From: Neoconidiobolus thromboides FSU 785
Taxonomy: Eukaryota > Fungi > Entomophthoromycota
NCBI GenBank assembly: GCA_025603075.1
Contig: MU626317.1
Span: forward strand, 46,250 to 110,249
Length of the DNA stretch: 64,000 nucleotides
Reading direction: 5' to 3'
A model generated the notes under the pieces. That model was not told the DNA's origin. It made no database searches and was given only the letters and a program-made list of their open reading frames with translations. The translations under genes and the position numbers were made by a program. Position 1 is the stretch's first letter; the number at the start of each line of letters is the position of its first letter. Below, one piece after another: positions 15,057 through 27,672 of this stretch.

Positions 15057-18000
15057 CTAACTAAGCATATCTTCTCTATCAACCACATTATTATTCATAT
15101 TACTTCCATCTTCCAATTGTGAAAAGTTCAAGTAATGAGCAGGTCTATGACGTTCGTCATAAAATGGTAAAGGTACTTCTAAGCTAAGATGATATTCCTT
15201 ATCAGGCTGATGAGAAGCACCCTGGAAATTATAATTCCAAATTGAATCAACAGGTGAAAGGAAAAATCCGAAAAACTTGTCTGAAAGTAACATTTGAATA
15301 CGCTCATAATGGGTTGGTAAGTATCCTGCTGGGTTAGTACCGCTTAGATCTTTGTTGGATGCTCCCCACTCATTACCTGATGGCGTTACTTTGTAACAAG
15401 TGAGTGAACAAGAACCTGGCGTAAATGCACAGGTAATAATTACTGAAGTATCGATATCCCAACCTGGATAAGAGCCAAGTAATTTAGCATGTGTAGTAAC
15501 GTCTTGTGGTGAAAGATGGGGTAGCTCATTTGGTAGAGTATGGATCCAGCCTAAAGGTTCAAGGTCATTCAGCTGCTCATGTTCTGGTGGATTATTTGGA
15601 AGATGCACCATTTGGTGAGTACCCCATTGAGGCACCATAACTATGGAACGGATCTCTTTAACTTGTGGATTATCTTTTGGCGAAACACCATACAAAAATC
15701 CTGAAATTTGAGTTCGAAGATCAGAAATTATAATAAAACGCTTAAGTAAGTTTTTAGGCAACACATAAGTATACCCTGAATCCTTTAGATCATCACTAGC
15801 AACAAAGATGTGTTGGGTTCTCAATTGGAGATTGGTAGATGAAATAGCTCTTACTCTCCAATCTGTTTTAGAAGAAAAGGTTTGAGTTTCATACCCAGTT
15901 GTGGTAGTAGTAATAATTTCGTCTCCATGAATATTATGAGTTTTAGTGGTCACTGCCGTCAGTTGGCTTTGTTCTTTAGCTTGCTTTTCGATTTCAGCAA
16001 TTTGTTGACGTTGAAGCGAAGGAGCTGAAATTTCCATACCAAGGATAATATCACGGATTTCAGGTTGAGTCAAAGAAGCAACGTTAACATTATTCTTTTT
16101 ACCATAGTCTGCAAGGATAAGATCTTTTAAGGCAACCTCCACCTTAATCCATTCATCATCTGGTAAAGTGGGCCAGATATGATGTGCTTCAGTGATTGTA
16201 TTCTTATCAGGACGAAGAATCATTTTAGTCTTATCATTATTCACATGAAGTGCTCTTAAAATCAAAATCAAACGGAAGAAAGCAGTATATGAGGAAATCG
16301 TCGTTAGGAAATTATCATAAAGATTAAACAGACACATCATTGGCTCATTCGCTTTAAGGATAAGATCTCCAAACTTCTCTACTTTAAGACAAGCTTGGAA
16401 AGGTAATTGTAACTCAGAACCTTTGATCACAATATTGGGGAAATCTAAAAGATGAACCTCAAGTGGATCCAACATACCCTTACGAGTAACAATGATTTGT
16501 CTTGGTTGTTCTTCCACTGGAAGTGAACGAATAAGAGCAGCTACTTCTTCAGCAGTCTTCCACTTGGCTAATTGGCCAAGACGTTTTTGTCCAGCCCATA
16601 CCGAAGTATGAATAATCTTAAGGAAGAGATCACCATTACGTGGGTTGAAAATAAAGATAGCACCATTGATAGGTTTTGTGGTTAAATTACCTTCAAATGT
16701 CTTATGGATGGTAACGCGATAAACATTAGTATCATCCACAAACCAAATAATTTGATTTGAGAATAATTCACCGTAATTTGTTGAGTTAAGGTATGGTTCG
16801 GTTGGTTCAGATGAATACAATTGCACACCTTTACGAATACGTTCACGGAGTACATAGAGAGCAGGATTAGCTTTAATAATCTTACCCATGGCTTGCTGTG
16901 TAAGTGGCTTAAGCCCAGGGAACCAATTACCATAAGCAGAATAGAGATTGTAAGCAAGATCAACACCAATCATCATACCAGTAGGTGAAGGATAGATACT
17001 CATATTATCTGTAGTATAATCTAAGAACTTGGCACGAGTGTAACGTTCAACATCATGAGAGTCAAAGTCACCCCAGCGTAATTGGATATCAATCCAGAAT
17101 TTTTGAATAGTACCATTATCCATTGAATCTTTATTATCATTCAAAAGGGAAGGTCTGGATACACCCCATTTATAACTAGCAAACAAGAGAATATCCGCAC
17201 ATGAACTGTTCATTTTATAACTTTTACGTGGATGGATCGTTTCTTTTTGTACTGACTCAATTTGCAAGGCTTCGGATTCTTGGTCAAACACTTGCACCAT
17301 ATCCATCACCAATGCTTCGTGGATTTTTTGCCACAAATGTGCACGGAAAATTTGAATCAAGGAAATTTTAAGTGTTGGGATTTTACCATGCATAAAAATA
17401 CCTGTTAAATCAAGTTGTACTTGGAAACCAACATACACATTTGAATTGTGGACAACGGCATTATTACCAAGTAAAAAGAGCTTGTCGGAATCCTCGTCTA
17501 AAGTTATACCACAATATTGGCCTAGAGTTCCAGCTGTTTTAACAACATTAAATCTATATTCAACTGGTAAATATTGAACAGCGATTGGGGCCTCCCTGCG
17601 TTTGCGATCAATTGATGAGAGACTGAGTACTTTAGTTAAAGCACTGCAAGGCACAAACGTTACGCAGGACTTAAAGCCATTATTAGTTTCATGATTTGAA
17701 ACAGAATATTTGATACCAAGGGAGCGAGCTAAAGCTAAGGCACCAGTAACAATGTTTTGGTGTACTGAAGTAAATACTACTTTTTGGTATTTTTCTCTGG
17801 CTTCTTTGAAATCATTGTATCGGGTCAACTCCATCTTATTTTCAAGCTCTTTATCTTCTGGATTTGGATTAACAACTTCACCATCTGAATCAATTAAACC
17901 AGCCAAGAGATTCTCACGGACAGATATAGATTCAGTAAAAAACCATGTTGGTACAACCTTAGGTTGAGATCTTTTCATATTGAGTTGGCACATCAAATTC

Positions 18001-21000
18001 CATATTTTATTTGTTTTAATTTCTTTATTAACATTCACTTCTTCAGATGCTAACTCTCCAATGTTTAATGCTTCAGCTCCGATGTTATGATATATTGCTC
18101 TAACACGTTTCATTTGACTTATATAGTCTTTATTGTCAGCATTCTTTTCTGCTGTTCTATCGCCGGCAATCCATAAACCAACAAGCCAGGCAACATTGTT
18201 TACTTCGCTAGCAGGCAAGCCTTCTTTTCTACATATTTCTTCAAATTTATTATTTCCAAGCAATACTGGTGCTACAAGCTGGTAAGTTAATTGACGGATA
18301 CTTTCATCCACAAATGAGTATAATTGTGTCTCAAGTTCCCAAGTAATGGTTGATTTACTCAAGTTGATTAAATTGTCTCTAAATCCTTTTGCAGCCTCGA
18401 ATGTATTTGCTTTAGAGTTCTCATAATCTGATATATGGAACGATTTTTTGATCCAAGCAACCATTTGAATTTCCTCACCATTAAATTCTCTTGTTACAAG
18501 TGAAGTATAATTGATATAGAAGGATTCACCAGTTTGTTCATCTTTAGTCACTTCACCAACAGTCATATGGGTAGTCAGATGTAATAAATGCCTAGAATTA
18601 CTGGTATACTTAATAAGATCTAATCCCTCTTCATTACTTGACTTTTCTTGGTCATGATGTACTTCGCAAACCTCATACATAGTATCTTGTCCTGAGTGAA
18701 CCCCAGTTACCTTCCTTGGCTTTGAGTCCATACCCAATACATTGTCTCCAATTTTAATGTCTTTAATAGCACGAATAGACCCATCAGCCATGTATACAGG
18801 AGTAGAAGGAGCAAAGCACCTGTTGATCGTAGGTGACCACCAAAGAGTAAAACGACGATTTGGAATTTGATTCAAACCAGATCTCTGTGCATTTGTGAGC
18901 TTCTTGTATTTCATACTTTCTTCGAATCCAGAGTTATGTACTACCATACTATCCGATCTTAAGAATCTTTGATTACCGTCAACTAAGAAACCGTAATATT
19001 CTTGAGGTTCAGTCATTTTAATTGAAACAATTGGAACAAAGAATTCCTTGATGGCTACTGCATTGGTATCCGAATTGATACTATTTTTGGGATTTTCATC
19101 AATATATAAAGCTGGATCAGCTTCGACCTTTTCAAAATCTGTTTCATTAATATAAATAAATTCTTCACTTTGATTAATAGCAACTTTATAAAGAGACCAA
19201 ATATGCTGAACATGTTGAGGCAATGAAAGTAAATCTCTTACAGTTGTTTCAATTTGGTAAGTTTTAACTGCAGCAGAAGTTGTTTCTAAATGTTTCAAGA
19301 AATTAGCGCCTGCGTCACCTGCTTCTTTTTTAGTTTGAATTTCTTTTTCTCCAACCTTGAAGCTCATAGAGCAGTATCCACTATTGTACCAATAGACAGT
19401 ATAAGAAGATGAATCTTCGCTCCAGGACATAACCGCCTTATTTGAAGATGCTAAGCATAAAATATGATTACCAGTAACAGTTAAAGCTTCGCCAACACGG
19501 GGTAAAATTTCATATAATGGTGCAACACCTTGAACGACTTCCTTAATATTACGTGGTAATTGATCATCACCCATTAGTTTATCATTCACACTAACATCTT
19601 TAGCTAATTTTATAGATCCATCTTGGAGCATAAGTGGAGTAGCACCAGAGAAACAAGCTTTTTCCCAAAACAGACCTTCCCAAGTAGGGAAGTAAGTACC
19701 TTTAAACAATGTATGTTCTAAAATACCTTCAACACCACCCAAGGCTTGAATCATATCAGTACGATAATTATTTAGATTCCAAAGTTTACCATCGTGGCGT
19801 TGATGGGTCCACCAGAATGGATTATTTTTGAGTATTTGGTACTGTTTGAAATCAGTACGAACACGCCACCCTTTATCATAGGCAAGGGTATGTCGATCCT
19901 TTTGGAATAAGGTATTAATTCTAGGGATACCTCGATCCCAACTATCTTCCAAATCTTCAAGAGTAAGTCGACGATTTTGTGCTGTAGCTTCTTGACGTTT
20001 CAAAGCATATTCTGCCCATACACGTTGCGAATCAATAAACTCAGATTCCCAAGGTTGAAGATAACGAAATAAATTAGGAATCAAGGTATCTTCATCATGG
20101 GACATACCAGATCTAAAATGAGTGATACCAGTTTCAGTTTGACGTGACCATCTAAGGTCGGATTGTGGGATAAGTACATGGCCCATAGACAACATACCTA
20201 GACCACCCAATTCCTTTGGACAATTATGACCAATTAAAAAGTCACCATGACAGAATAATTGTGATTGTCCTTTTTCTACTTGGAAACCGTAATACTCATC
20301 AACTGCTTCAGCTTGGCTGGAGATCTCAAAGATACGATAATTGACTTTTGGAATGGCTGATTTCATACTTGCGAGTTTGACAAATTTACAAGGCAACACA
20401 TCTAAATCGCTACTTAAATACACTTTTCCTACATACTCAGTAGAATCTTTGCTTTTAGTCTTTGTAGCAATAGTAGATAAACCAAGGGATCGACCCAACT
20501 CATAGACTAATTTCAATACGGGCTCATTTGAATCAAGGCTTTTAATAAAAACATACCCATCATCTTGAACTTGACCACTTGAATCAATTAAACCTGCAAG
20601 TAAAGCACGACGAACATAGCCAGGCTCTTGTACAAAACGTTCGATTTCACTGTAATCATTAATTGTACTGTGATCTATGCACATCTTTGTTAGTAAAGCC
20701 TTAAATATGTCGATATCGATGTTCTTATTGGCTGAAACATTTGATTTTGTAAATCCAGAGCTACCAAGGTGTGCTCCGATTGCCCAAGCGTAATCTTCAG
20801 CAGAATCCTTATTAAGCTTGTTTTTAAAGCTATGGCAAGAATGTAATAAACTTGGTATGCTTCTATTTTTGCTTCCAATCGGCCATTCTTCGATCGAAGT
20901 ACTATATCTCATCATACATGGTAAAACTTTGGTTCCTGTTTTTATCATTTGTGATCTGTATTTATTGTATTCACTTACGCTTACAATCCATTCATTAGAA

Positions 21001-24000
21001 TTTGATAAACCTTCAATGACATTCATAATCACTTCATCAATATCATTTTCATGTTTAATATACGTTGCATAATCAAATTCTACCAACTTTTCGATTTCAA
21101 ATGGACGGATCAATTTAAGCATGGAATCGAATTTAAGCTTCCAATAATATACTTTATAAACTACGTTGGATTGGTTGGCTTTAACTTCTTCAATATCATA
21201 AAAGCACTGTACAACTCTTGAAACCTTTGGAATTTGTAAAACTAACAAATGGTTTTCATTACATAGAAATCCAGGCTCAAATAACAGCTCTTCATTATAG
21301 GCACAATTTAAAGCCTTTGAAAGTTTAACTCTATATAATGGTGCAGTACCTGAAACTAAATGTTCTACTCTACGGATTTTACCATCATCACCAAGCACTT
21401 GGTTTCCAACTTTGATTTCTTCAATTGACTTTGTGGTACCATTAGCTAAACGTATAGGCATCCCCTTACCATAACAATAGAATACAACAGGTGGGAAACG
21501 ACTAGGCATTTTAGAATTAAGACCAATTTTTACACGAGTTTGAATCTTTGATTCACTCTTAACCAAAAGATCTAAGATTTCACGAGTATGTACTACTGCT
21601 TCACGATAATATGTCATTAATCCAATCAAAGCTGTATTCCATTTGTTGACAATCTTTGAAAAGGTAGTGGATCCAGAGGACATTAATATTTGACGGATAC
21701 GATTATTGAAACGCTGGATAGACTCATCATCTACCCTTAAAAAGGCTTGTGCAGTACGTTCTTTAGTTTGTTCATTAATTAAATTCCATACACCATCTTT
21801 AAGTGAAAATGTTTCTTCCTTTGCACGAATCTTTGGCAAAATTCGAACTTCAAATCCACACATGGAGAATAAAAGATTGGGATTATCTCTTGAGTAAACA
21901 CTCACAAATGTTTCTTCCCAATCAAGGGTTGTAACTGATCTTGGTAAACGATTTTTCATATCCCAAAAGGTAGCACGACCTAAATTGACATCGTGCTTCA
22001 TCAAACGCATTCTACAATCACGTGGCCAGCATTTTTTGTTATTGTAACCAACAATATTTTCATTATTAGGATCCGGATGCTCTGTTAAATATCTTTGAAT
22101 CAAATCTCTTGATTCATCAGCACTGAATCTGAAAAGTATATAAATACGATCTATATAACGAGAGTAAAGTCTTATTGGATGTTTAGTTTCAGTAGGAACA
22201 TCTCTAAATTGCAAAAAGTCATTTGGGAGTTGAGGCGGTCCAGCCATTTCAGATGCTCTTTGTAAACCAAGGAGCAATAAATCCAAGACTAAGCCCCAGA
22301 ACTGATAAATGAACGAAGCAAATTGTAAACCACGAATTAAACCATAAGAATTTAAATGATTCATATCCTTATAATTAAGAACAACATTATTTTTTGCTGA
22401 CATATAATCGGCTAAATTATGATCCAAGATTAAACGTAAAAGTCTATTCAAAACTGTAATATCCACTTTCTCATATACTTTGTTAAGCCTTGTTTCTACC
22501 ATTACATTACATTCACCTTCAGATGTTTCCCAAATATCAGTAAGGTTGTTAATTCCTTGACACCATTTGTAAGTAAGCAATGGAGGAGGTTCATTATCTG
22601 ACGGTTTAATCCATGCTGGGAAGAGATGACGCTTATCAGCTTCATACCAAAGATATTGATCAAGGTAGGCATCAGTGATCTTTTCCATTGGTTCCACGTC
22701 ATAAACCGGGATAAGATGAGAGTATAAATCCATGAACTCAATTCCTACTTCTTTAAATGCTCTTTGGGTCAAAAGTAAACGTTTAATTCTAGAAAGAGCT
22801 TCATGAGGATTATCATAAGCTTGTTCAATTAAACCGAGTTCTTCACGTTGAGATTGATTTAAACGTCCTTTTACAGAGTACGCTTCTCTTAAGCGTTCAA
22901 GAGCAAGGATCAACAATTTGGTATCGTGTTTATATGAGAGTGGTGGGAAAGGAATAGGAGTGAATTTTCTAGATTCGAGCCAGTGTACTGTTGAAGTGAA
23001 GATTGCAACAGCTTCTTCAGGAGAAATATAAGGACCATCTTTAAGATAATTATGTTGTCTTTCTTGCTCAGCCTTAAGCCACAATCTGGTCAAACGTCCT
23101 AAATTCTTTTTGCAAACTGTTTTATCAACTGTTGCTCCTCTACGGATACGTTCACGATTATAATGGGCTACACTGGTCCACCAATCAGCTTTAGATTTGA
23201 CATAACGGAGGATCATATTTTCTATAGGGGTAGGCAGACCTGGTACTTTCCATGGAATATTGGCTTTCCAACAATTGTGGGCAACAATGAAATTTCCAAG
23301 TAAAAAGAGAGGGTCTTTACCATCTAACTCGAAACCAAAATATTCACCTTTACTTGAGACTTCAGTGACATCAAATTGGTTATTGTTGTTGTCTTCCATA
23401 GCTACACTTTCTCCTTTCAGTTTGTTTATAAAAGGAAGAGTTGAAAATTCCCTGCCAAAAATATTAATCTGTTCCTCCCTATTTGATACAAATAAACCAA
23501 GAGATCTTGCAACTTGTACTACTAATTGTTTTAAAATAGGACTGATCTCATTGACTTTGATTTTAAGCTTTAAATCAAGTTGATCGATATTGAATGGCAA
23601 TGATTCTAATATACCGGCTAATATATTCGAGCGGAATAACTTTGATTGGTTCATAACACATGAAGCTAATAAATCAGAAGAAGGAAGTTCTTTCAATTTG
23701 CTTATACAATCCCATGCCATACTTCCAACACTTATATTACTATTGGGTTCTTTTATTCTAGTAGATGAAGCAAATTGCTGACCAATAGCATAAGCTACCG
23801 AGTTGATCGGTGCTGGAGTTTGATCTAATTCACCAGATGCTTTAAAATGTAAATTATGGATAACTTGTTCTAAATCTAATTCTGAAGAATATGGGAATTC
23901 GTTGACAGATTGACGAATCATAGTGAAAGTAAAAGAGGAGTGAAGAAGAGTTTTGGAAAATTTAACATAATTAAGTGAAGAAACTTCCCATCCAGCATTC

Positions 24001-26660
24001 AAAATGGTTGAATGATCTTTTTGGAGAGCTTTAATTGCGCTTGGCTTGTCTTCAAATCTATATATTGTGACCGGGTGATTTTGTTTTAATTTAATGGTAG
24101 AACTGTCACCCCACGTGTATACTGATCCAACAACAGACGGTGCTTCAAACCCAAGTTCTTCATTATATCTGATTTGAGGATGATAAAATGCAGCATATTT
24201 CTTGTTGGAATCTTTAGACATAATTATATTACCTGAAGTAGAGCAATTAAGAACCAAAGTATGTTCATCATTACATGTAAATAATTCTTCCTGAGTTTCT
24301 TTATCGCTGAACTTATACAAAGTTGAATGACCATACATTGTATCCTTCACTTTCTTTGGTTTTTGATCTTTACCCAAAACTCTATCCCCGATCTCAATAT
24401 TTTCTACGCATTTTAAGTTACCATCAGCCATCATAACTTTAGTTCCACGAGCAAAACAACGCCATGCTTCACTGAGATGCTGTAAAATGGTTTTAGATTT
24501 ATTGGCAGAAATACCTTCAGGCATCATATCTGTAATATCATGCATTACTGCAGCACGAAGTTCGAGGTCATAGTGGGATTCTACTCTCTGCTTAGTAACC
24601 GTTTTAGCAATACCTTTAGAATGACGTCCTTCGAATTGACGAGCAAGTAAATTACCAAGCCAGCGTTCGAGAAGTGGGACAATACCACGTAAGAAAAATA
24701 GCCATACTCTCCATCCTGGGGCCCAAAAACCACAACCAGGACCTTTGCCGACTGGCCCAGTATTGAATCTATAGTAGATCAAATGTTTTAAATCCTTGGT
24801 GAGACGGACTTGTCTCATTAATTTATACTTATAACGATACATACCAGTAAGCTGACCAACATGGGCAAAGATATACTGAAGACCATCAGCTAATTGGAAA
24901 GCATCAACATTGCCTAAACGATATTGTACATGTGAATCAACCACAAGCTTAGTAAGCCTTAAAATTTCACGACAAAGATGGAAAGCATTTCCGAAACGAG
25001 ATTTCTTACGTTCTTTAGTTGTTAAAGTTTTAATAGGCTTTAAATTGAAATTATAATCAAGATGGAGATAATTCAAATTTTTACGATGAATTAATAAATT
25101 CAGCATATTGTAACCTTGACGACACACTTGTAACCCTGCTTCTACCCAATCAAGATCAGTAATTTGGAAAAACTTGGTTGCTTTCAATTGACGGAATAAG
25201 TACTTTTTGTTTAACGCTTTAGGTTTACGATGCTTCAAGACATTCAAAACATAACATTTTAGTAACTTTTGGTAAGAAACACGGACCTTTACGGGCTGAT
25301 CTGGTGGACAATGCTCTAAGTACCAATTTTTGACAAGTGGGATATCTTGAGCACGTCTAGTGTTACCTGAACGCTTATCAAAAGGATGAGGGGCCCAGTA
25401 AAGAGCAATAGCATTTGAAGTATTATCAGTGTAAAGTGGAGCATCTTCAAAGAAAGGAGTTACATTTTCTGGTAAAGAGAATTCGAGATCTTCATCTTCA
25501 TCACCAAATATACTTTGTTCATGTAATCCAGAGATGCTTTTATCTTCGAAATCACGTGTAGAAATTGGATTAATAATAGGATCAAAATAAAATGTAGGTA
25601 ATTGAGGGTCATCATTACGAATGTAAACAACAGTTGGATAATGATACCATGAAACATGAACTGCTCTTGGTAAGGAATTATATAAAAATGGAAAAGCAAT
25701 CTTATACTCAGTACGAATTTGTTGACGAATGATAATCTTATTAATATCATTAAACTCATTCCAATCTTCATCAGCTGGGTCTAAATCTCTATATAAAGGC
25801 TCAAACTTAGGGCCACCTGGAATAGCTAAATTAAGTGATTTAGCAGTTATAAAAGAATTGACATCAAAAAGATAAAAGTAATTCTTATCATTGAGATCAG
25901 ATAAAAGTTGATGTGCTAAACGGTACAACGCTGACATGATTGGAAGATCAAGGTTCCATTTACGATAAGTATCGCCATTGATGAATTTTGTGCCAAGGAG
26001 TGGTTTATGGTCATAAAACCATTCATAAACTGCGCTATCTTCTTCTGGATCTAACTCCATTTGAATAGGCTCAAGAGGATCGACATCTAATATATTGTCA
26101 CCATAATCTAATGGAGGTTCTTCATCATCAAAAGGAGGGAAACGCATACGTTTAAAATGACGACGATCTCTTTTTTCTCTGCGCATCATAATCCACATGG
26201 TACCCCATTGAGCAAGGTAGATTGGCTCAACCACACGAGGTACCTCATTAACAAAAGTGATAGCACCAGTGATATGATACAAAACTGGGACTTCTCTTTC
26301 TTGTTCCCAGGGCATAGGCATGTTTTCTAATAACTTTAAAACGGCATGAGGGATATATTTAAGGGCACCCAAATAGATACGCTTATCATGGCGAAATTTT
26401 TTCGAAGACATATCACCATGGTCTTTAATGATTTTTCTAACGTGCTCCGGTGGCATTTTTTGCTTTTCTTGTTCAGCGAACCCGAATTTTCTTTTGTCGC
26501 CATAACGTTTTGAGTTCATTTGTTGCCATCTCTTAGCCTTCTCTTTGATTTTTTCGAGAAATCTAGCATTTTGAGGATCTAAAAGGTTATCCTCAGAAGC
26601 AGAAACTTGATAAGGATAATAATTTGAATTATTAGGAGCAGAATCTCCCTGTTCAGTCAT
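15057..26660 (-). CDS. PRP8: Pre-mRNA splicing factor Prp8 precursor (3867 aa) containing four inteins; predicted mature protein 2355 aa
   Basis: One uninterrupted ORF; the ATG is at 26660 (the track starts at TTG 26675). Hallmark Prp8 sequence throughout, e.g. [51 protein letters not shown]-terminal Jab1/MPN region. Confidence 0.98.
17445..18818 (-). mobile_element. PRP8 intein 4 (458 aa), inserted after extein residue 1560 (WWSPTINR|SNVYVGF); most intact LAGLIDADG endonuclease
   Basis: Starts [13 protein letters not shown]; block [12 protein letters not shown]; [12 protein letters not shown] and [11 protein letters not shown]; ALARSLGI; QYCGITL; ends AVVHN followed by Ser+1. Confidence 0.95.
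18933..19655 (-). mobile_element. PRP8 intein 3 (241 aa mini-intein) at the canonical PRP8-a site (FWEKA|SGFEES), after extein residue 1522
   Basis: Starts [13 protein letters not shown]; block [12 protein letters not shown]; [13 protein letters not shown]; ends MVVHN followed by Ser+1. No LAGLIDADG motif is visible. Confidence 0.95.
20223..21476 (-). mobile_element. PRP8 intein 2 (418 aa), inserted after extein residue 1333 (FPPVVFY|CPKELGG); degenerate LAGLIDADG
   Basis: Starts [13 protein letters not shown]; block [12 protein letters not shown]; [12 protein letters not shown] and [11 protein letters not shown]; EYYGFQV; ends LIGHN followed by Cys+1. Confidence 0.95.
23274..24458 (-). mobile_element. 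PRP8 intein 1 (395 aa), inserted after extein residue 734 (HLSEAWR|CWKANIPW); degenerate LAGLIDADG remnant
   Basis: Starts [13 protein letters not shown]; block [12 protein letters not shown]; block F EYFGFEL; ends IVAHN followed by Cys+1. Endonuclease remnant NILAGILES...VARSLGL. Confidence 0.95.
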
Positions 26661-27672
26661 CTTTAAATTGAACAAATTGGAGATTGATAAAAAAGTGAGT
26701 TAAATTTCTTAGATTATTTAAAATATAACTTTTAAATAAAAAAGTTAGTTCAATTCAATCCAAGTTGAAGTTGGTTTAAACATCCACGAAATCTGAGATA
26801 CTTATGAGACAAATCCTAGCTTCCAGTTATTTGATTGGATGCTAATTGCGCATTCCAATCCAAAAAGAACAAAATCCTACTATATAGACAAAAAGTTTAG
26901 AGTAACAGATGCTCTCTACATTTTGCTCAAAACTGCGAAATATGCATTTGCGTTTGACTAACTAACTTCTATTTTGCAATTAGTTTTAGGACCAAACATT
27001 CTTTCAAAAGTAGCAATTCGAGCTGTGAGCGTTGTTTTTGGTTGAAATAATGAAACTATTAAATTAGAACTTAATAACGATACATGTTATATTACTTTCT
27101 TAATAAATTAGAGAATAATCATTATTTTAAAGTTATAATCCTTGATTTAATCCTTGGTTGTCTTTTTATATAATATTCAATAGGTTATTTTTTTATATTA
27201 TAATATGTTATTAGATAAACCAAATTGAGCTATTATTTTTAGGACTAACACAACTAATTGATCAATCACAATATTAAGAAATTTTGAACACAAACTTAGT
27301 TTATTTAATAAGCTTAAAAATTACTGATCTAGTTACAATCTAAAAATAAATAATCCCCAAGACATTATCTACAATAACGCTCTCTTCATCTTGATGCTAC
27401 AACCATATCTGATTGATAGTAAATAACGATATTAATCTTGTTCTTTAGCAGCTTAAAAACTTTCAATTCAAACAAGTAATTTTTATATTAAAATTTTTAT
27501 TAGAGAAGGAAACAAAATTGAAAACTTGGGCAGGTCAATTGAATTCTAAATTCAATTTCAATAACATAATAATACTTTAAACTTCATAAGAAAGCTAAGA
27601 GTAATGAGCTGTTCATCATAAAATTATTGCATGGTCAATAACCTTTGTACCAATAGCTTAATAATTCTTGCT

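What the first reader, a model, noticed from the sequence alone, without database searches (positions are those of the whole stretch)
17442..21476. Non-a intein sites where the +1 nucleophile differs from the usual Prp8 residue
Seen: intein 4 is followed by Ser (TINR|SNVYVG) and intein 2 by Cys (VVFY|CPKELGG). Established knowledge: yeast and human Prp8 read TINRANVYVG and FYTPKELGG. Ala cannot act as the +1 nucleophile, so the site-4 intein can splice only in an Ala-to-Ser allele. Inference: the substitution either arrived with the intein by co-conversion or pre-existed and opened the site. After splicing it leaves a changed residue in a highly conserved segment lining the spliceosome catalytic cavity.
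Basis: partly seen in the sequence, partly recalled or inferred. Interest (0 to 1): 0.75.

Follow-up and report, generated by a model that had tools for sequence, protein, structure and literature searches.

The report
Intein-linked Ala-to-Ser change in Prp8
A fungal spliceosome gene (Prp8 of Neoconidiobolus thromboides) carries four self-splicing inteins; one sits where the host protein normally has alanine, so every intein-bearing copy has serine there, a known kind of intein-host coupling, while the cysteine after another intein is ordinary fungal variation.

Summary
The minus-strand ORF 15060-26660 is an intron-less, single-copy Prp8 gene with four precise in-frame inteins. The window is Neoconidiobolus thromboides; the public gene model cut the inteins out as introns.

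Intein 4 (17445-18818) lies between TINR and SNVYVG, with +1 Ser codon TCA. Intein 2 (20223-21476) lies between VVFY and CPKELGG, with +1 Cys codon TGT.

I tabulated both positions in 291 Prp8 proteins.

- **Site 4:** all 21 other intein-bearing alleles (Coemansia, Kickxella, Sorochytrium) have Ser. Of 264 empty alleles, 255 have Ala, 8 Ser and 1 Cys. Both nearest relatives have Ala. Ser is therefore tied to the intein.
- **Site 2:** Cys occurs in 54 of 244 empty alleles, including the sister Entomophthora muscae. Inteins at this known site also use Thr or Ser.

An invaded-Ser, empty-non-nucleophile split that requires co-conversion is already published for the haloarchaeal MCM-d intein. This is a new eukaryotic example at a Prp8 site I could not match to sites a-g. 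Whether Ser arrived by co-conversion or pre-existed is unresolved.

Other first-stage notes on this same genome made the same observation; none came from other DNA.

The parts
15060..26660 (-). Prp8 precursor gene: 3867 codons from the ATG, no introns, 2355 extein codons plus four inteins. It is the only Prp8 copy in the 24.6 Mb assembly.
   Evidence: Exteins are 100% and 99.75% identical (two largest segments) to the Neoconidiobolus thromboides FSU 785 model P0003.
23274..24458 (-). Intein 1, 395 aa, at SEAWR|CWKAN. This is the published site b shared with Batrachochytrium. Its +1 Cys is the normal host residue.
   Evidence: 188 of 194 empty alleles have Cys
20223..21476 (-). Intein 2, 418 aa, at VVFY|CPKELGG. 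Hint domain plus a degenerate LAGLIDADG endonuclease; the second motif reads LAGLIDSSG.
20220..20222 (-). +1 Cys codon (TGT) of intein 2. It corresponds to human Prp8 position 1318 and yeast 1390.
18933..19655 (-). Intein 3, a 241 aa mini-intein at the classic site a (WEKA|SGFEES). Its +1 Ser is the native residue.
18819..18932 (-). 38-codon extein segment between inteins 3 and 4.
17445..18818 (-). Intein 4, 458 aa, at TINR|SNVYVG. It is PI-SceI-like over its full length. Both LAGLIDADG motifs keep their acidic residues and the Lys aligned to PI-SceI K301 is kept.
17442..17444 (-). +1 Ser codon (TCA) of intein 4. It replaces the near-universal Ala (human A1545, yeast position 1617) and is one base change from GCA.

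Best explanation
The gene is the single, essential Prp8 of Neoconidiobolus thromboides, interrupted by four inteins that must all splice out of the protein. Intein 4 belongs to an old allelic family of PI-SceI-like inteins that occupy the TINR|x site in Kickxellales, the blastoclad Sorochytrium and this entomophthoralean fungus. Splicing needs a Cys, Ser or Thr side chain at +1, and empty Prp8 alleles have Ala there. Only alleles that carry Ser next to the intein give a working spliceosome, so intein and Ser codon are inherited, gained and lost as one unit. The Ser codon directly abuts the insertion point. Any endonuclease-driven homing into an Ala allele would therefore copy it along with the intein (inferred, by analogy with the haloarchaeal MCM-d Pro-to-Ser case). 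After splicing, the mature Prp8 keeps Ser in place of Ala. That change must be tolerated, because there is no second Prp8 gene. The Cys after intein 2 is different. It is the ordinary residue of many early-diverging fungi with an empty site, so that site was most likely already open, or the Cys is far older than this intein copy.
For: Anatomy: four precise in-frame insertions with Cys1, a block-B His, terminal His-Asn and a +1 nucleophile. Pfam Hint and endonuclease matches are above cut-off. The gene is single-copy.

Coupling at site 4: 21 of 21 other intein-bearing alleles have Ser. Of the empty alleles, 255 have Ala, 8 Ser and 1 Cys. Within Coemansia and Kickxella, every intein-bearing species listed has Ser, and the four-species empty clade has Ala. 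That empty clade sits among intein-bearing lineages in the extein tree (support 0.83).

Family: the site-4 inteins form one clade (100/100) against VMA1 inteins. The order Sorochytrium, N. thromboides, Kickxellales matches the host order, and several sub-clades match the extein tree.

Codons: TCA, TCC or TCG in four intein-bearing alleles against GCA, GCC or GCT in three empty ones, a single base change.

Endonuclease: intein 4 aligns end to end with PI-SceI (E 1.8e-42) and keeps both catalytic Asp and the Lys.

Precedent: for the MCM-d intein, invaded alleles always have Ser, empty ones mostly have Pro, and Pro must be co-converted to Ser (PMC10643990).

Site 2: 54 of 244 empty alleles have Cys, including E. 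muscae. Inteins at the site use Cys, Thr or Ser.
Against: There is no direct evidence of splicing, homing or co-conversion in this organism. Nine empty alleles carry Ser or Cys at site 4, so Ser can exist without the intein and could have preceded it. Only two other Entomophthoromycotina Prp8 proteins were available as sister taxa. Tree supports for the key nodes are moderate (84/81, 83/82, 0.83). Most Coemansia copies have decayed endonuclease motifs, so in that clade the coupling reflects vertical inheritance under selection rather than ongoing homing. Gene models in other fungi may hide inteins as introns, as in P0003, which would bias the census.
Confidence: 0.8

Rival explanations
1. A standing Ser allele opened the site. 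An Ala-to-Ser change arose first in an empty Prp8 allele as neutral variation and only then allowed an intein to settle. No co-conversion is needed to explain the Ser.
For: Eight empty alleles have Ser and one has Cys (Umbelopsis isabellina, Benjaminiella, Actinomortierella, Backusella, Chilomastix, Anaeramoeba flamelloides, three unnamed JGI proteins). Two of the JGI proteins group with the intein-bearing Sorochytrium in the extein tree. So Ser is tolerated without an intein, and open targets exist.
Against: E. muscae and C. coronatus, the nearest relatives, have Ala. The empty Coemansia clade has Ala. Empty Ser alleles are only about 3% of those sampled. The two examined at DNA level use AGC and AGT, two steps from their sisters' GCC and GCT, whereas this window uses TCA.
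Confidence: 0.3
2. Ordinary lineage variation at both positions. Ser and Cys are simply what this fungal lineage has there, unrelated to the inteins.
For: This holds for site 2. Cys is found in 54 of 244 empty alleles; every named one is an early-diverging fungus or a metamonad, and they include the sister E. muscae.
Against: It fails for site 4. The split is 21 of 21 intein-bearing alleles with Ser against 255 of 264 empty alleles with Ala, and the sisters have Ala.
Confidence: 0.1
3. The inserts are not protein-spliced. They are introns, as the public gene model assumes, or the gene is decaying.
For: The NCBI/JGI model P0003 removes all four inserts as introns.
Against: All four are in frame with no stop over 3867 codons. 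They begin with Cys and end His-Asn before a nucleophile, and they match Hint and endonuclease families above cut-off. The model leaves scars, such as 19 residues of intein 4's end. It is the only Prp8 gene in the genome.
Confidence: 0.02

Closest known systems
Haloarchaeal MCM-d intein (Haloferacales), PMC10643990
   Same: Invaded alleles always encode Ser immediately downstream, and empty alleles mostly encode a non-nucleophile. The authors conclude that the residue must be co-converted during invasion and that this lowers the invasion rate.
   Different: The host is archaeal and the gene is a different essential one. The empty residue there is Pro rather than Ala. Their case was tested by allele exchange, while this one rests on sequence comparison only.
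Published Prp8 inteins at sites a to g (Green et al. 2019, PMC6805012; Monier et al. 2013, PMC3749507; Anaeramoeba paper, PMC10710043)
   Same: The host protein and intein class are the same. Intein 3 is site a and intein 1 is site b (as in Batrachochytrium). Intein 2 shares its insertion point with a Capsaspora intein.
   Different: The TINR|S site is not any site I could identify from those papers and proteins. It lies 38 residues after site a, whereas Bathycoccus site d lies 87 after. Capsaspora has an empty Ala there, site g is N-terminal, and site c is LEVH|C. The figures were not readable, so this is not absolute.
PI-SceI (VMA1-derived endonuclease) of Saccharomyces cerevisiae, PDB 1VDE/1LWS
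   Same: Intein 4 aligns over its full length (E 1.8e-42) and keeps Cys1, the block-B His, both LAGLIDADG Asp, the Lys and the terminal His-Asn.
   Different: The host gene and site differ. The +1 residue of VMA1 is a native Cys, so no host substitution is needed there.

Membership tests
Class 1 intein with PI-SceI-type homing endonuclease | Precise in-frame insertion relative to intein-free orthologues | tested here: met
   four insertions with intact flanks on both sides against P0011.
Class 1 intein with PI-SceI-type homing endonuclease | Cys1, block-B His, C-terminal His-Asn, and a +1 Cys, Ser or Thr | tested here: met
   C1, H77, H457 and N458 are invariant in the site-4 family. The +1 residues are Ser (intein 4) and Cys (intein 2).
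Class 1 intein with PI-SceI-type homing endonuclease | Hint and Hom_end profile matches above curated cut-offs | tested here: met
   Hom_end_hint 164.6 and 77.7 bits (cut-off 32.1); Hom_end 53.9 and 26.5 bits (cut-off 21.1) for inteins 4 and 2.
Class 1 intein with PI-SceI-type homing endonuclease | Endonuclease catalytic residues (two LAGLIDADG Asp and one Lys) | tested here: met
   Met for intein 4 ([15 protein letters not shown], and the Lys aligned to K301). Not met for intein 2 (LAGLIDSSG).
Class 1 intein with PI-SceI-type homing endonuclease | Protein splicing and DNA cleavage activity | not testable with these tools
   Needs expression and cleavage assays.
Invasion that requires co-conversion of the +1 codon (MCM-d type) | Invaded alleles always have a nucleophile; empty alleles mostly have a non-nucleophile | tested here: met
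   21 of 21 Ser against 255 of 264 Ala.
Invasion that requires co-conversion of the +1 codon (MCM-d type) | Conversion tract visible in flanking extein DNA | tested here: inconclusive
   the flanks are almost invariant at protein level. In Umbelopsis, differences per 60 nt rise only from 6-7 upstream to 11 around the site. No close empty allele of N. thromboides is available.
Invasion that requires co-conversion of the +1 codon (MCM-d type) | An intein followed by the non-nucleophile residue is non-viable or does not splice | not testable with these tools
   Follows from splicing chemistry but was not tested here.
Published Prp8 insertion sites a to g | Same insertion point as a named site | tested here: not met
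   This row is for intein 4. It is not site a, b, c or d; the site is empty in Capsaspora (which hosts e and f); and site g is N-terminal. Intein 2 does share the Capsaspora VVFY|T point.

The most novel reading that the evidence does not exclude
The scattered Ser or Cys residues at this position in intein-free Prp8 may be footprints of lost site-4 inteins. They occur in Umbelopsis, Benjaminiella, Backusella, Actinomortierella, blastoclad-like JGI proteins, Anaeramoeba and Chilomastix. The return to Ala in the empty Coemansia clade may show that Ser is a mildly harmful scar the intein forces on the spliceosome core. If so, the +1 residue could serve as a molecular fossil of past intein occupancy across eukaryotes. 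The same logic would apply to the widespread Cys at the VVFY|x site.
Probability: 0.2. Interest if true: 0.55.

Novelty: new member of a known kind. Interest (0 to 1): 0.4.

Why it matters
It gives a clean eukaryotic example of an intein dictating a residue in a nearly invariant segment of the spliceosome's central protein. The invaded-Ser versus empty-Ala split covers three fungal lineages. It points to a Prp8 insertion site that I could not find in the published a-g scheme. It also shows that gene models in early-diverging fungi hide inteins as introns, so intein censuses based on annotated proteins undercount them. The mechanism itself is already documented in archaea, so the conceptual advance is modest. 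The testable extras are whether Ala-to-Ser at yeast position 1617 has a splicing phenotype, and whether intein 4's endonuclease is still active.

Tried and rejected
- **Co-conversion tract test.** I compared 600 nt around the site in two sister pairs with Ser versus Ala empty alleles (Umbelopsis isabellina/vinacea, Benjaminiella/Thamnidium). There was no clear local excess of differences, and an intron and an intein confound the outer windows.
- **Tree with bootstraps.** An IQ-TREE run of the Kickxellales extein tree failed on thread count and then timed out. FastTree SH-like supports were used instead.
- **Metagenome scan.** A scan with an alignment of five site-4 inteins found only one hit, an unrelated intein-like insert in what looks like a phage/virus gene (my reading of the ORFs, no family search run). 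It is not Prp8.
- **Literature.** Searches for inteins in Coemansia, Conidiobolus, Kickxellomycotina or Zoopagomycota listed no paper containing the word intein. The 2022-2026 Prp8 intein papers listed do not cover these fungi, judging by their titles and abstracts.
- **Sister taxa.** The N-terminal-region protein search added no further Entomophthoromycotina Prp8 beyond E. muscae and C. coronatus.
- **Joined extein model.** I did not hand a joined (spliced) extein model to any search tool. Exteins were searched by reference, either as single pieces or as regions of the whole precursor. For trees, each protein was aligned to an intein-free reference inside a script and only the reference columns were kept.
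Full report
**What is there**

The window has about 25% G+C outside genes. Its minus strand holds one open frame of 3872 codons, 15057-26675. From the ATG at 26660 it encodes a 3867-residue Prp8 precursor.

Pairwise alignment to an intein-free Prp8 (Entophlyctis, P0011) shows four clean insertions with intact flanks:
- 395 aa at SEAWR|CWKAN
- 418 aa at VVFY|CPKELGG
- 241 aa at WEKA|SGFEES
- 458 aa at TINR|SNVYVG

Each insert starts with Cys and ends in His-Asn. All four pass Pfam's Hom_end_hint cut-off, and inteins 2 and 4 also pass Hom_end.

The exteins are 100% and 99.75% identical over their two largest segments to the Neoconidiobolus thromboides FSU 785 model P0003. That names the organism. 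The public model removed the inteins as introns and kept scars of them. The assembly has no second Prp8 gene, so all four inteins have to splice for the cell to have a spliceosome. That last step is an inference.

**The observation**

The +1 codon of intein 4 is TCA (Ser, 17444-17442). The +1 codon of intein 2 is TGT (Cys, 20222-20220). The site-4 residue aligns with human Prp8 Ala1545 and yeast chain position 1617. The site-2 residue corresponds to human 1318 and yeast 1390.

**Census**

Three region-restricted searches with the whole precursor, given by reference, returned 291 Prp8 proteins. I scored both positions in all of them.

Site 4:

| State | Ser | Ala | Cys |
|---|---|---|---|
| Intein-bearing (21 proteins, plus the window) | 21 | 0 | 0 |
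| Empty (264 proteins) | 8 | 255 | 1 |

- The intein-bearing proteins are Coemansia species, Kickxella alabastrina, Sorochytrium milnesiophthora and the scarred N. thromboides model.
- The two other Entomophthoromycotina proteins available, E. muscae and C. coronatus, have Ala.
- Within Coemansia and Kickxella, every intein-bearing species listed has Ser. The four-species clade with an empty site has Ala.
- In an extein tree that empty clade sits among intein-bearing lineages with support 0.83. This suggests loss followed by return to Ala, though never having been invaded is not excluded.

Site 2:

| State | Thr | Cys | Ser | Ala |
|---|---|---|---|---|
| Empty (244 proteins) | 183 | 54 | 6 | 1 |

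- The Cys-bearing empty alleles include E. muscae, Batrachochytrium, Glomeromycota, Umbelopsis, Mortierellaceae, Smittium and Allomyces.
- Inteins at this same point use Cys in most cases, Thr in Capsaspora and two others, or Ser.
- So the Cys here is ordinary variation, and the usual Thr would have served as nucleophile.

**The site-4 intein family**

Intein 4 aligns end to end with PI-SceI (E 1.8e-42). It keeps both LAGLIDADG Asp residues and the Lys aligned to K301. An exhaustive representative search finds its best relatives in Prp8 at the same site, then VMA1 inteins.

A tree of 21 site-4 inteins rooted on two VMA1 inteins gives one clade (100/100). The branching order is Sorochytrium, then N. 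thromboides, then Kickxellales, with supports 84/81 and 83/82. Sub-clades mirror the extein tree. That pattern fits an old, largely vertically inherited family.

Most Coemansia copies have decayed endonuclease motifs. The N. thromboides copy is the best preserved. Intein 2's second motif reads LAGLIDSSG, so its endonuclease is probably dead.

**Codons**

| Allele | State | +1 codon |
|---|---|---|
| N. thromboides | intein, Ser | TCA |
| C. aciculifera | intein, Ser | TCC |
| C. spiralis-labelled strain | intein, Ser | TCG |
| Sorochytrium | intein, Ser | TCA |
| Kickxella | intein, Ser | AGC |
| Three empty alleles | empty, Ala | GCA, GCC, GCT |
| Umbelopsis isabellina | empty, Ser | AGC |
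| Benjaminiella | empty, Ser | AGT |

GCN to TCN is a single base change. The two empty Ser alleles examined are two steps away from their sister species' GCC and GCT. I have no firm explanation for that.

**Mechanism**

Splicing chemistry requires a Cys, Ser or Thr side chain at +1; this is established knowledge. With a single essential gene, selection therefore ties the intein to a Ser codon that directly abuts it.

In any homing event the repair copy would include that codon. This is an inference. The same situation is published for the haloarchaeal MCM-d intein. There, invaded alleles always have Ser, empty ones mostly have Pro, and the authors conclude that Pro must be co-converted to Ser (PMC10643990).

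Nine empty alleles with Ser or Cys show that the site can also be open beforehand. The first colonisation may have used such an allele.

**Not unique within Prp8**

A census of about 20 insertion points shows other sites where the intein-bearing residue differs from the usual one:

| Site (P0011 numbering) | Usual residue | Intein-bearing residue |
|---|---|---|
| c (LEVH\|x) | Leu | Cys |
| 931 | Asp | Ser |
| 1424 | Gln | Ser or Cys |
| 1458 | Gln | Ser |
| 167 | Pro | Ser |

Site 4 is among the most closed sites, with about 3% nucleophile in empty alleles.

**Comparison with the literature**

Published work names Prp8 sites a to g (PMC6805012; PMC3749507). A later paper adds AKWK|TAEE (PMC10710043).

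- Intein 3 is site a and intein 1 is site b.
- Intein 2 shares its point with a Capsaspora intein.
- The TINR|S site matched none of the sites I could reconstruct from text and sequences. I could not see the figures.
- No paper in the library links inteins with Coemansia, Conidiobolus or their subphyla.

**Limits**

- There are no expression, splicing or cleavage data.
- The sister sampling is thin.
- The census depends on gene models that may hide inteins.
- The statement that the residue lines the catalytic cavity was not checked on coordinates.
- No joined extein model was given to any search tool.

**Verdict**

Site 4 is a real intein-linked substitution of a known kind at an apparently uncatalogued Prp8 site. 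Site 2 is ordinary lineage variation.

Noticed in passing
P0148 (Mycoemilia scoparia, 6458 aa); P0143 and P0144 (Dimargaris, about 6000 aa); P0121 and P0132 (Coemansia, about 5000 aa): Kickxellomycotina Prp8 proteins carry 9 to 10 intein-sized insertions each. My 291-protein sample shows roughly 20 distinct insertion points. The 2023 PNAS paper treats five inteins in one Prp8 as remarkable, and seven to eight sites are published.
   Followed up: partly
P0003 compared with window 15060-26660: The public gene model of N. thromboides FSU 785 Prp8 (2331 aa) removed all four inteins as introns. It keeps scars: 19 residues of intein 4's end before SNVYVG, and VVFYSIPKELGG at site 2. Protein-based intein surveys would miss this gene.
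   Followed up: yes
L005 (Umbelopsis isabellina) and L011 (Benjaminiella poitrasii), codon before NVYVGF: Empty Ser alleles use AGC and AGT, while their sister species have GCC and GCT. That is two base changes apart rather than the single step to TCN seen next to the intein.
   Followed up: partly
P0011 reference positions 617, 1318, 1673 and 1800 in Coemansia, Sorochytrium, Mycoemilia and P0166: A second type of Hint insert starts CFPxxD and ends VVGN rather than His-Asn. It recurs at several Prp8 sites. At the FEGNLT|TKPING site it uses the native Thr at +1.
   Followed up: no
P0137 and P0164, both labelled Coemansia spiralis: The two assemblies differ in intein content (site 4 occupied with Ser versus empty with Ala). 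Their exteins are under 92% identical, so they are not the same lineage despite the shared name.
   Followed up: partly
window 20223-21476 and 23274-24458: Inteins 2 and 1 have degenerate LAGLIDADG motifs (LAGLIDSSG and ILAGILESL), while intein 4 keeps both acidic motifs. The four inteins appear to be at different stages of endonuclease decay.
   Followed up: partly
L013 (metagenome contig JAEIGA010003688.1), 1336-2589: An unrelated Hint plus LAGLIDADG insert ending IVHN|C sits in what looks like a phage or virus gene. It was picked up only through shared intein motifs.
   Followed up: no
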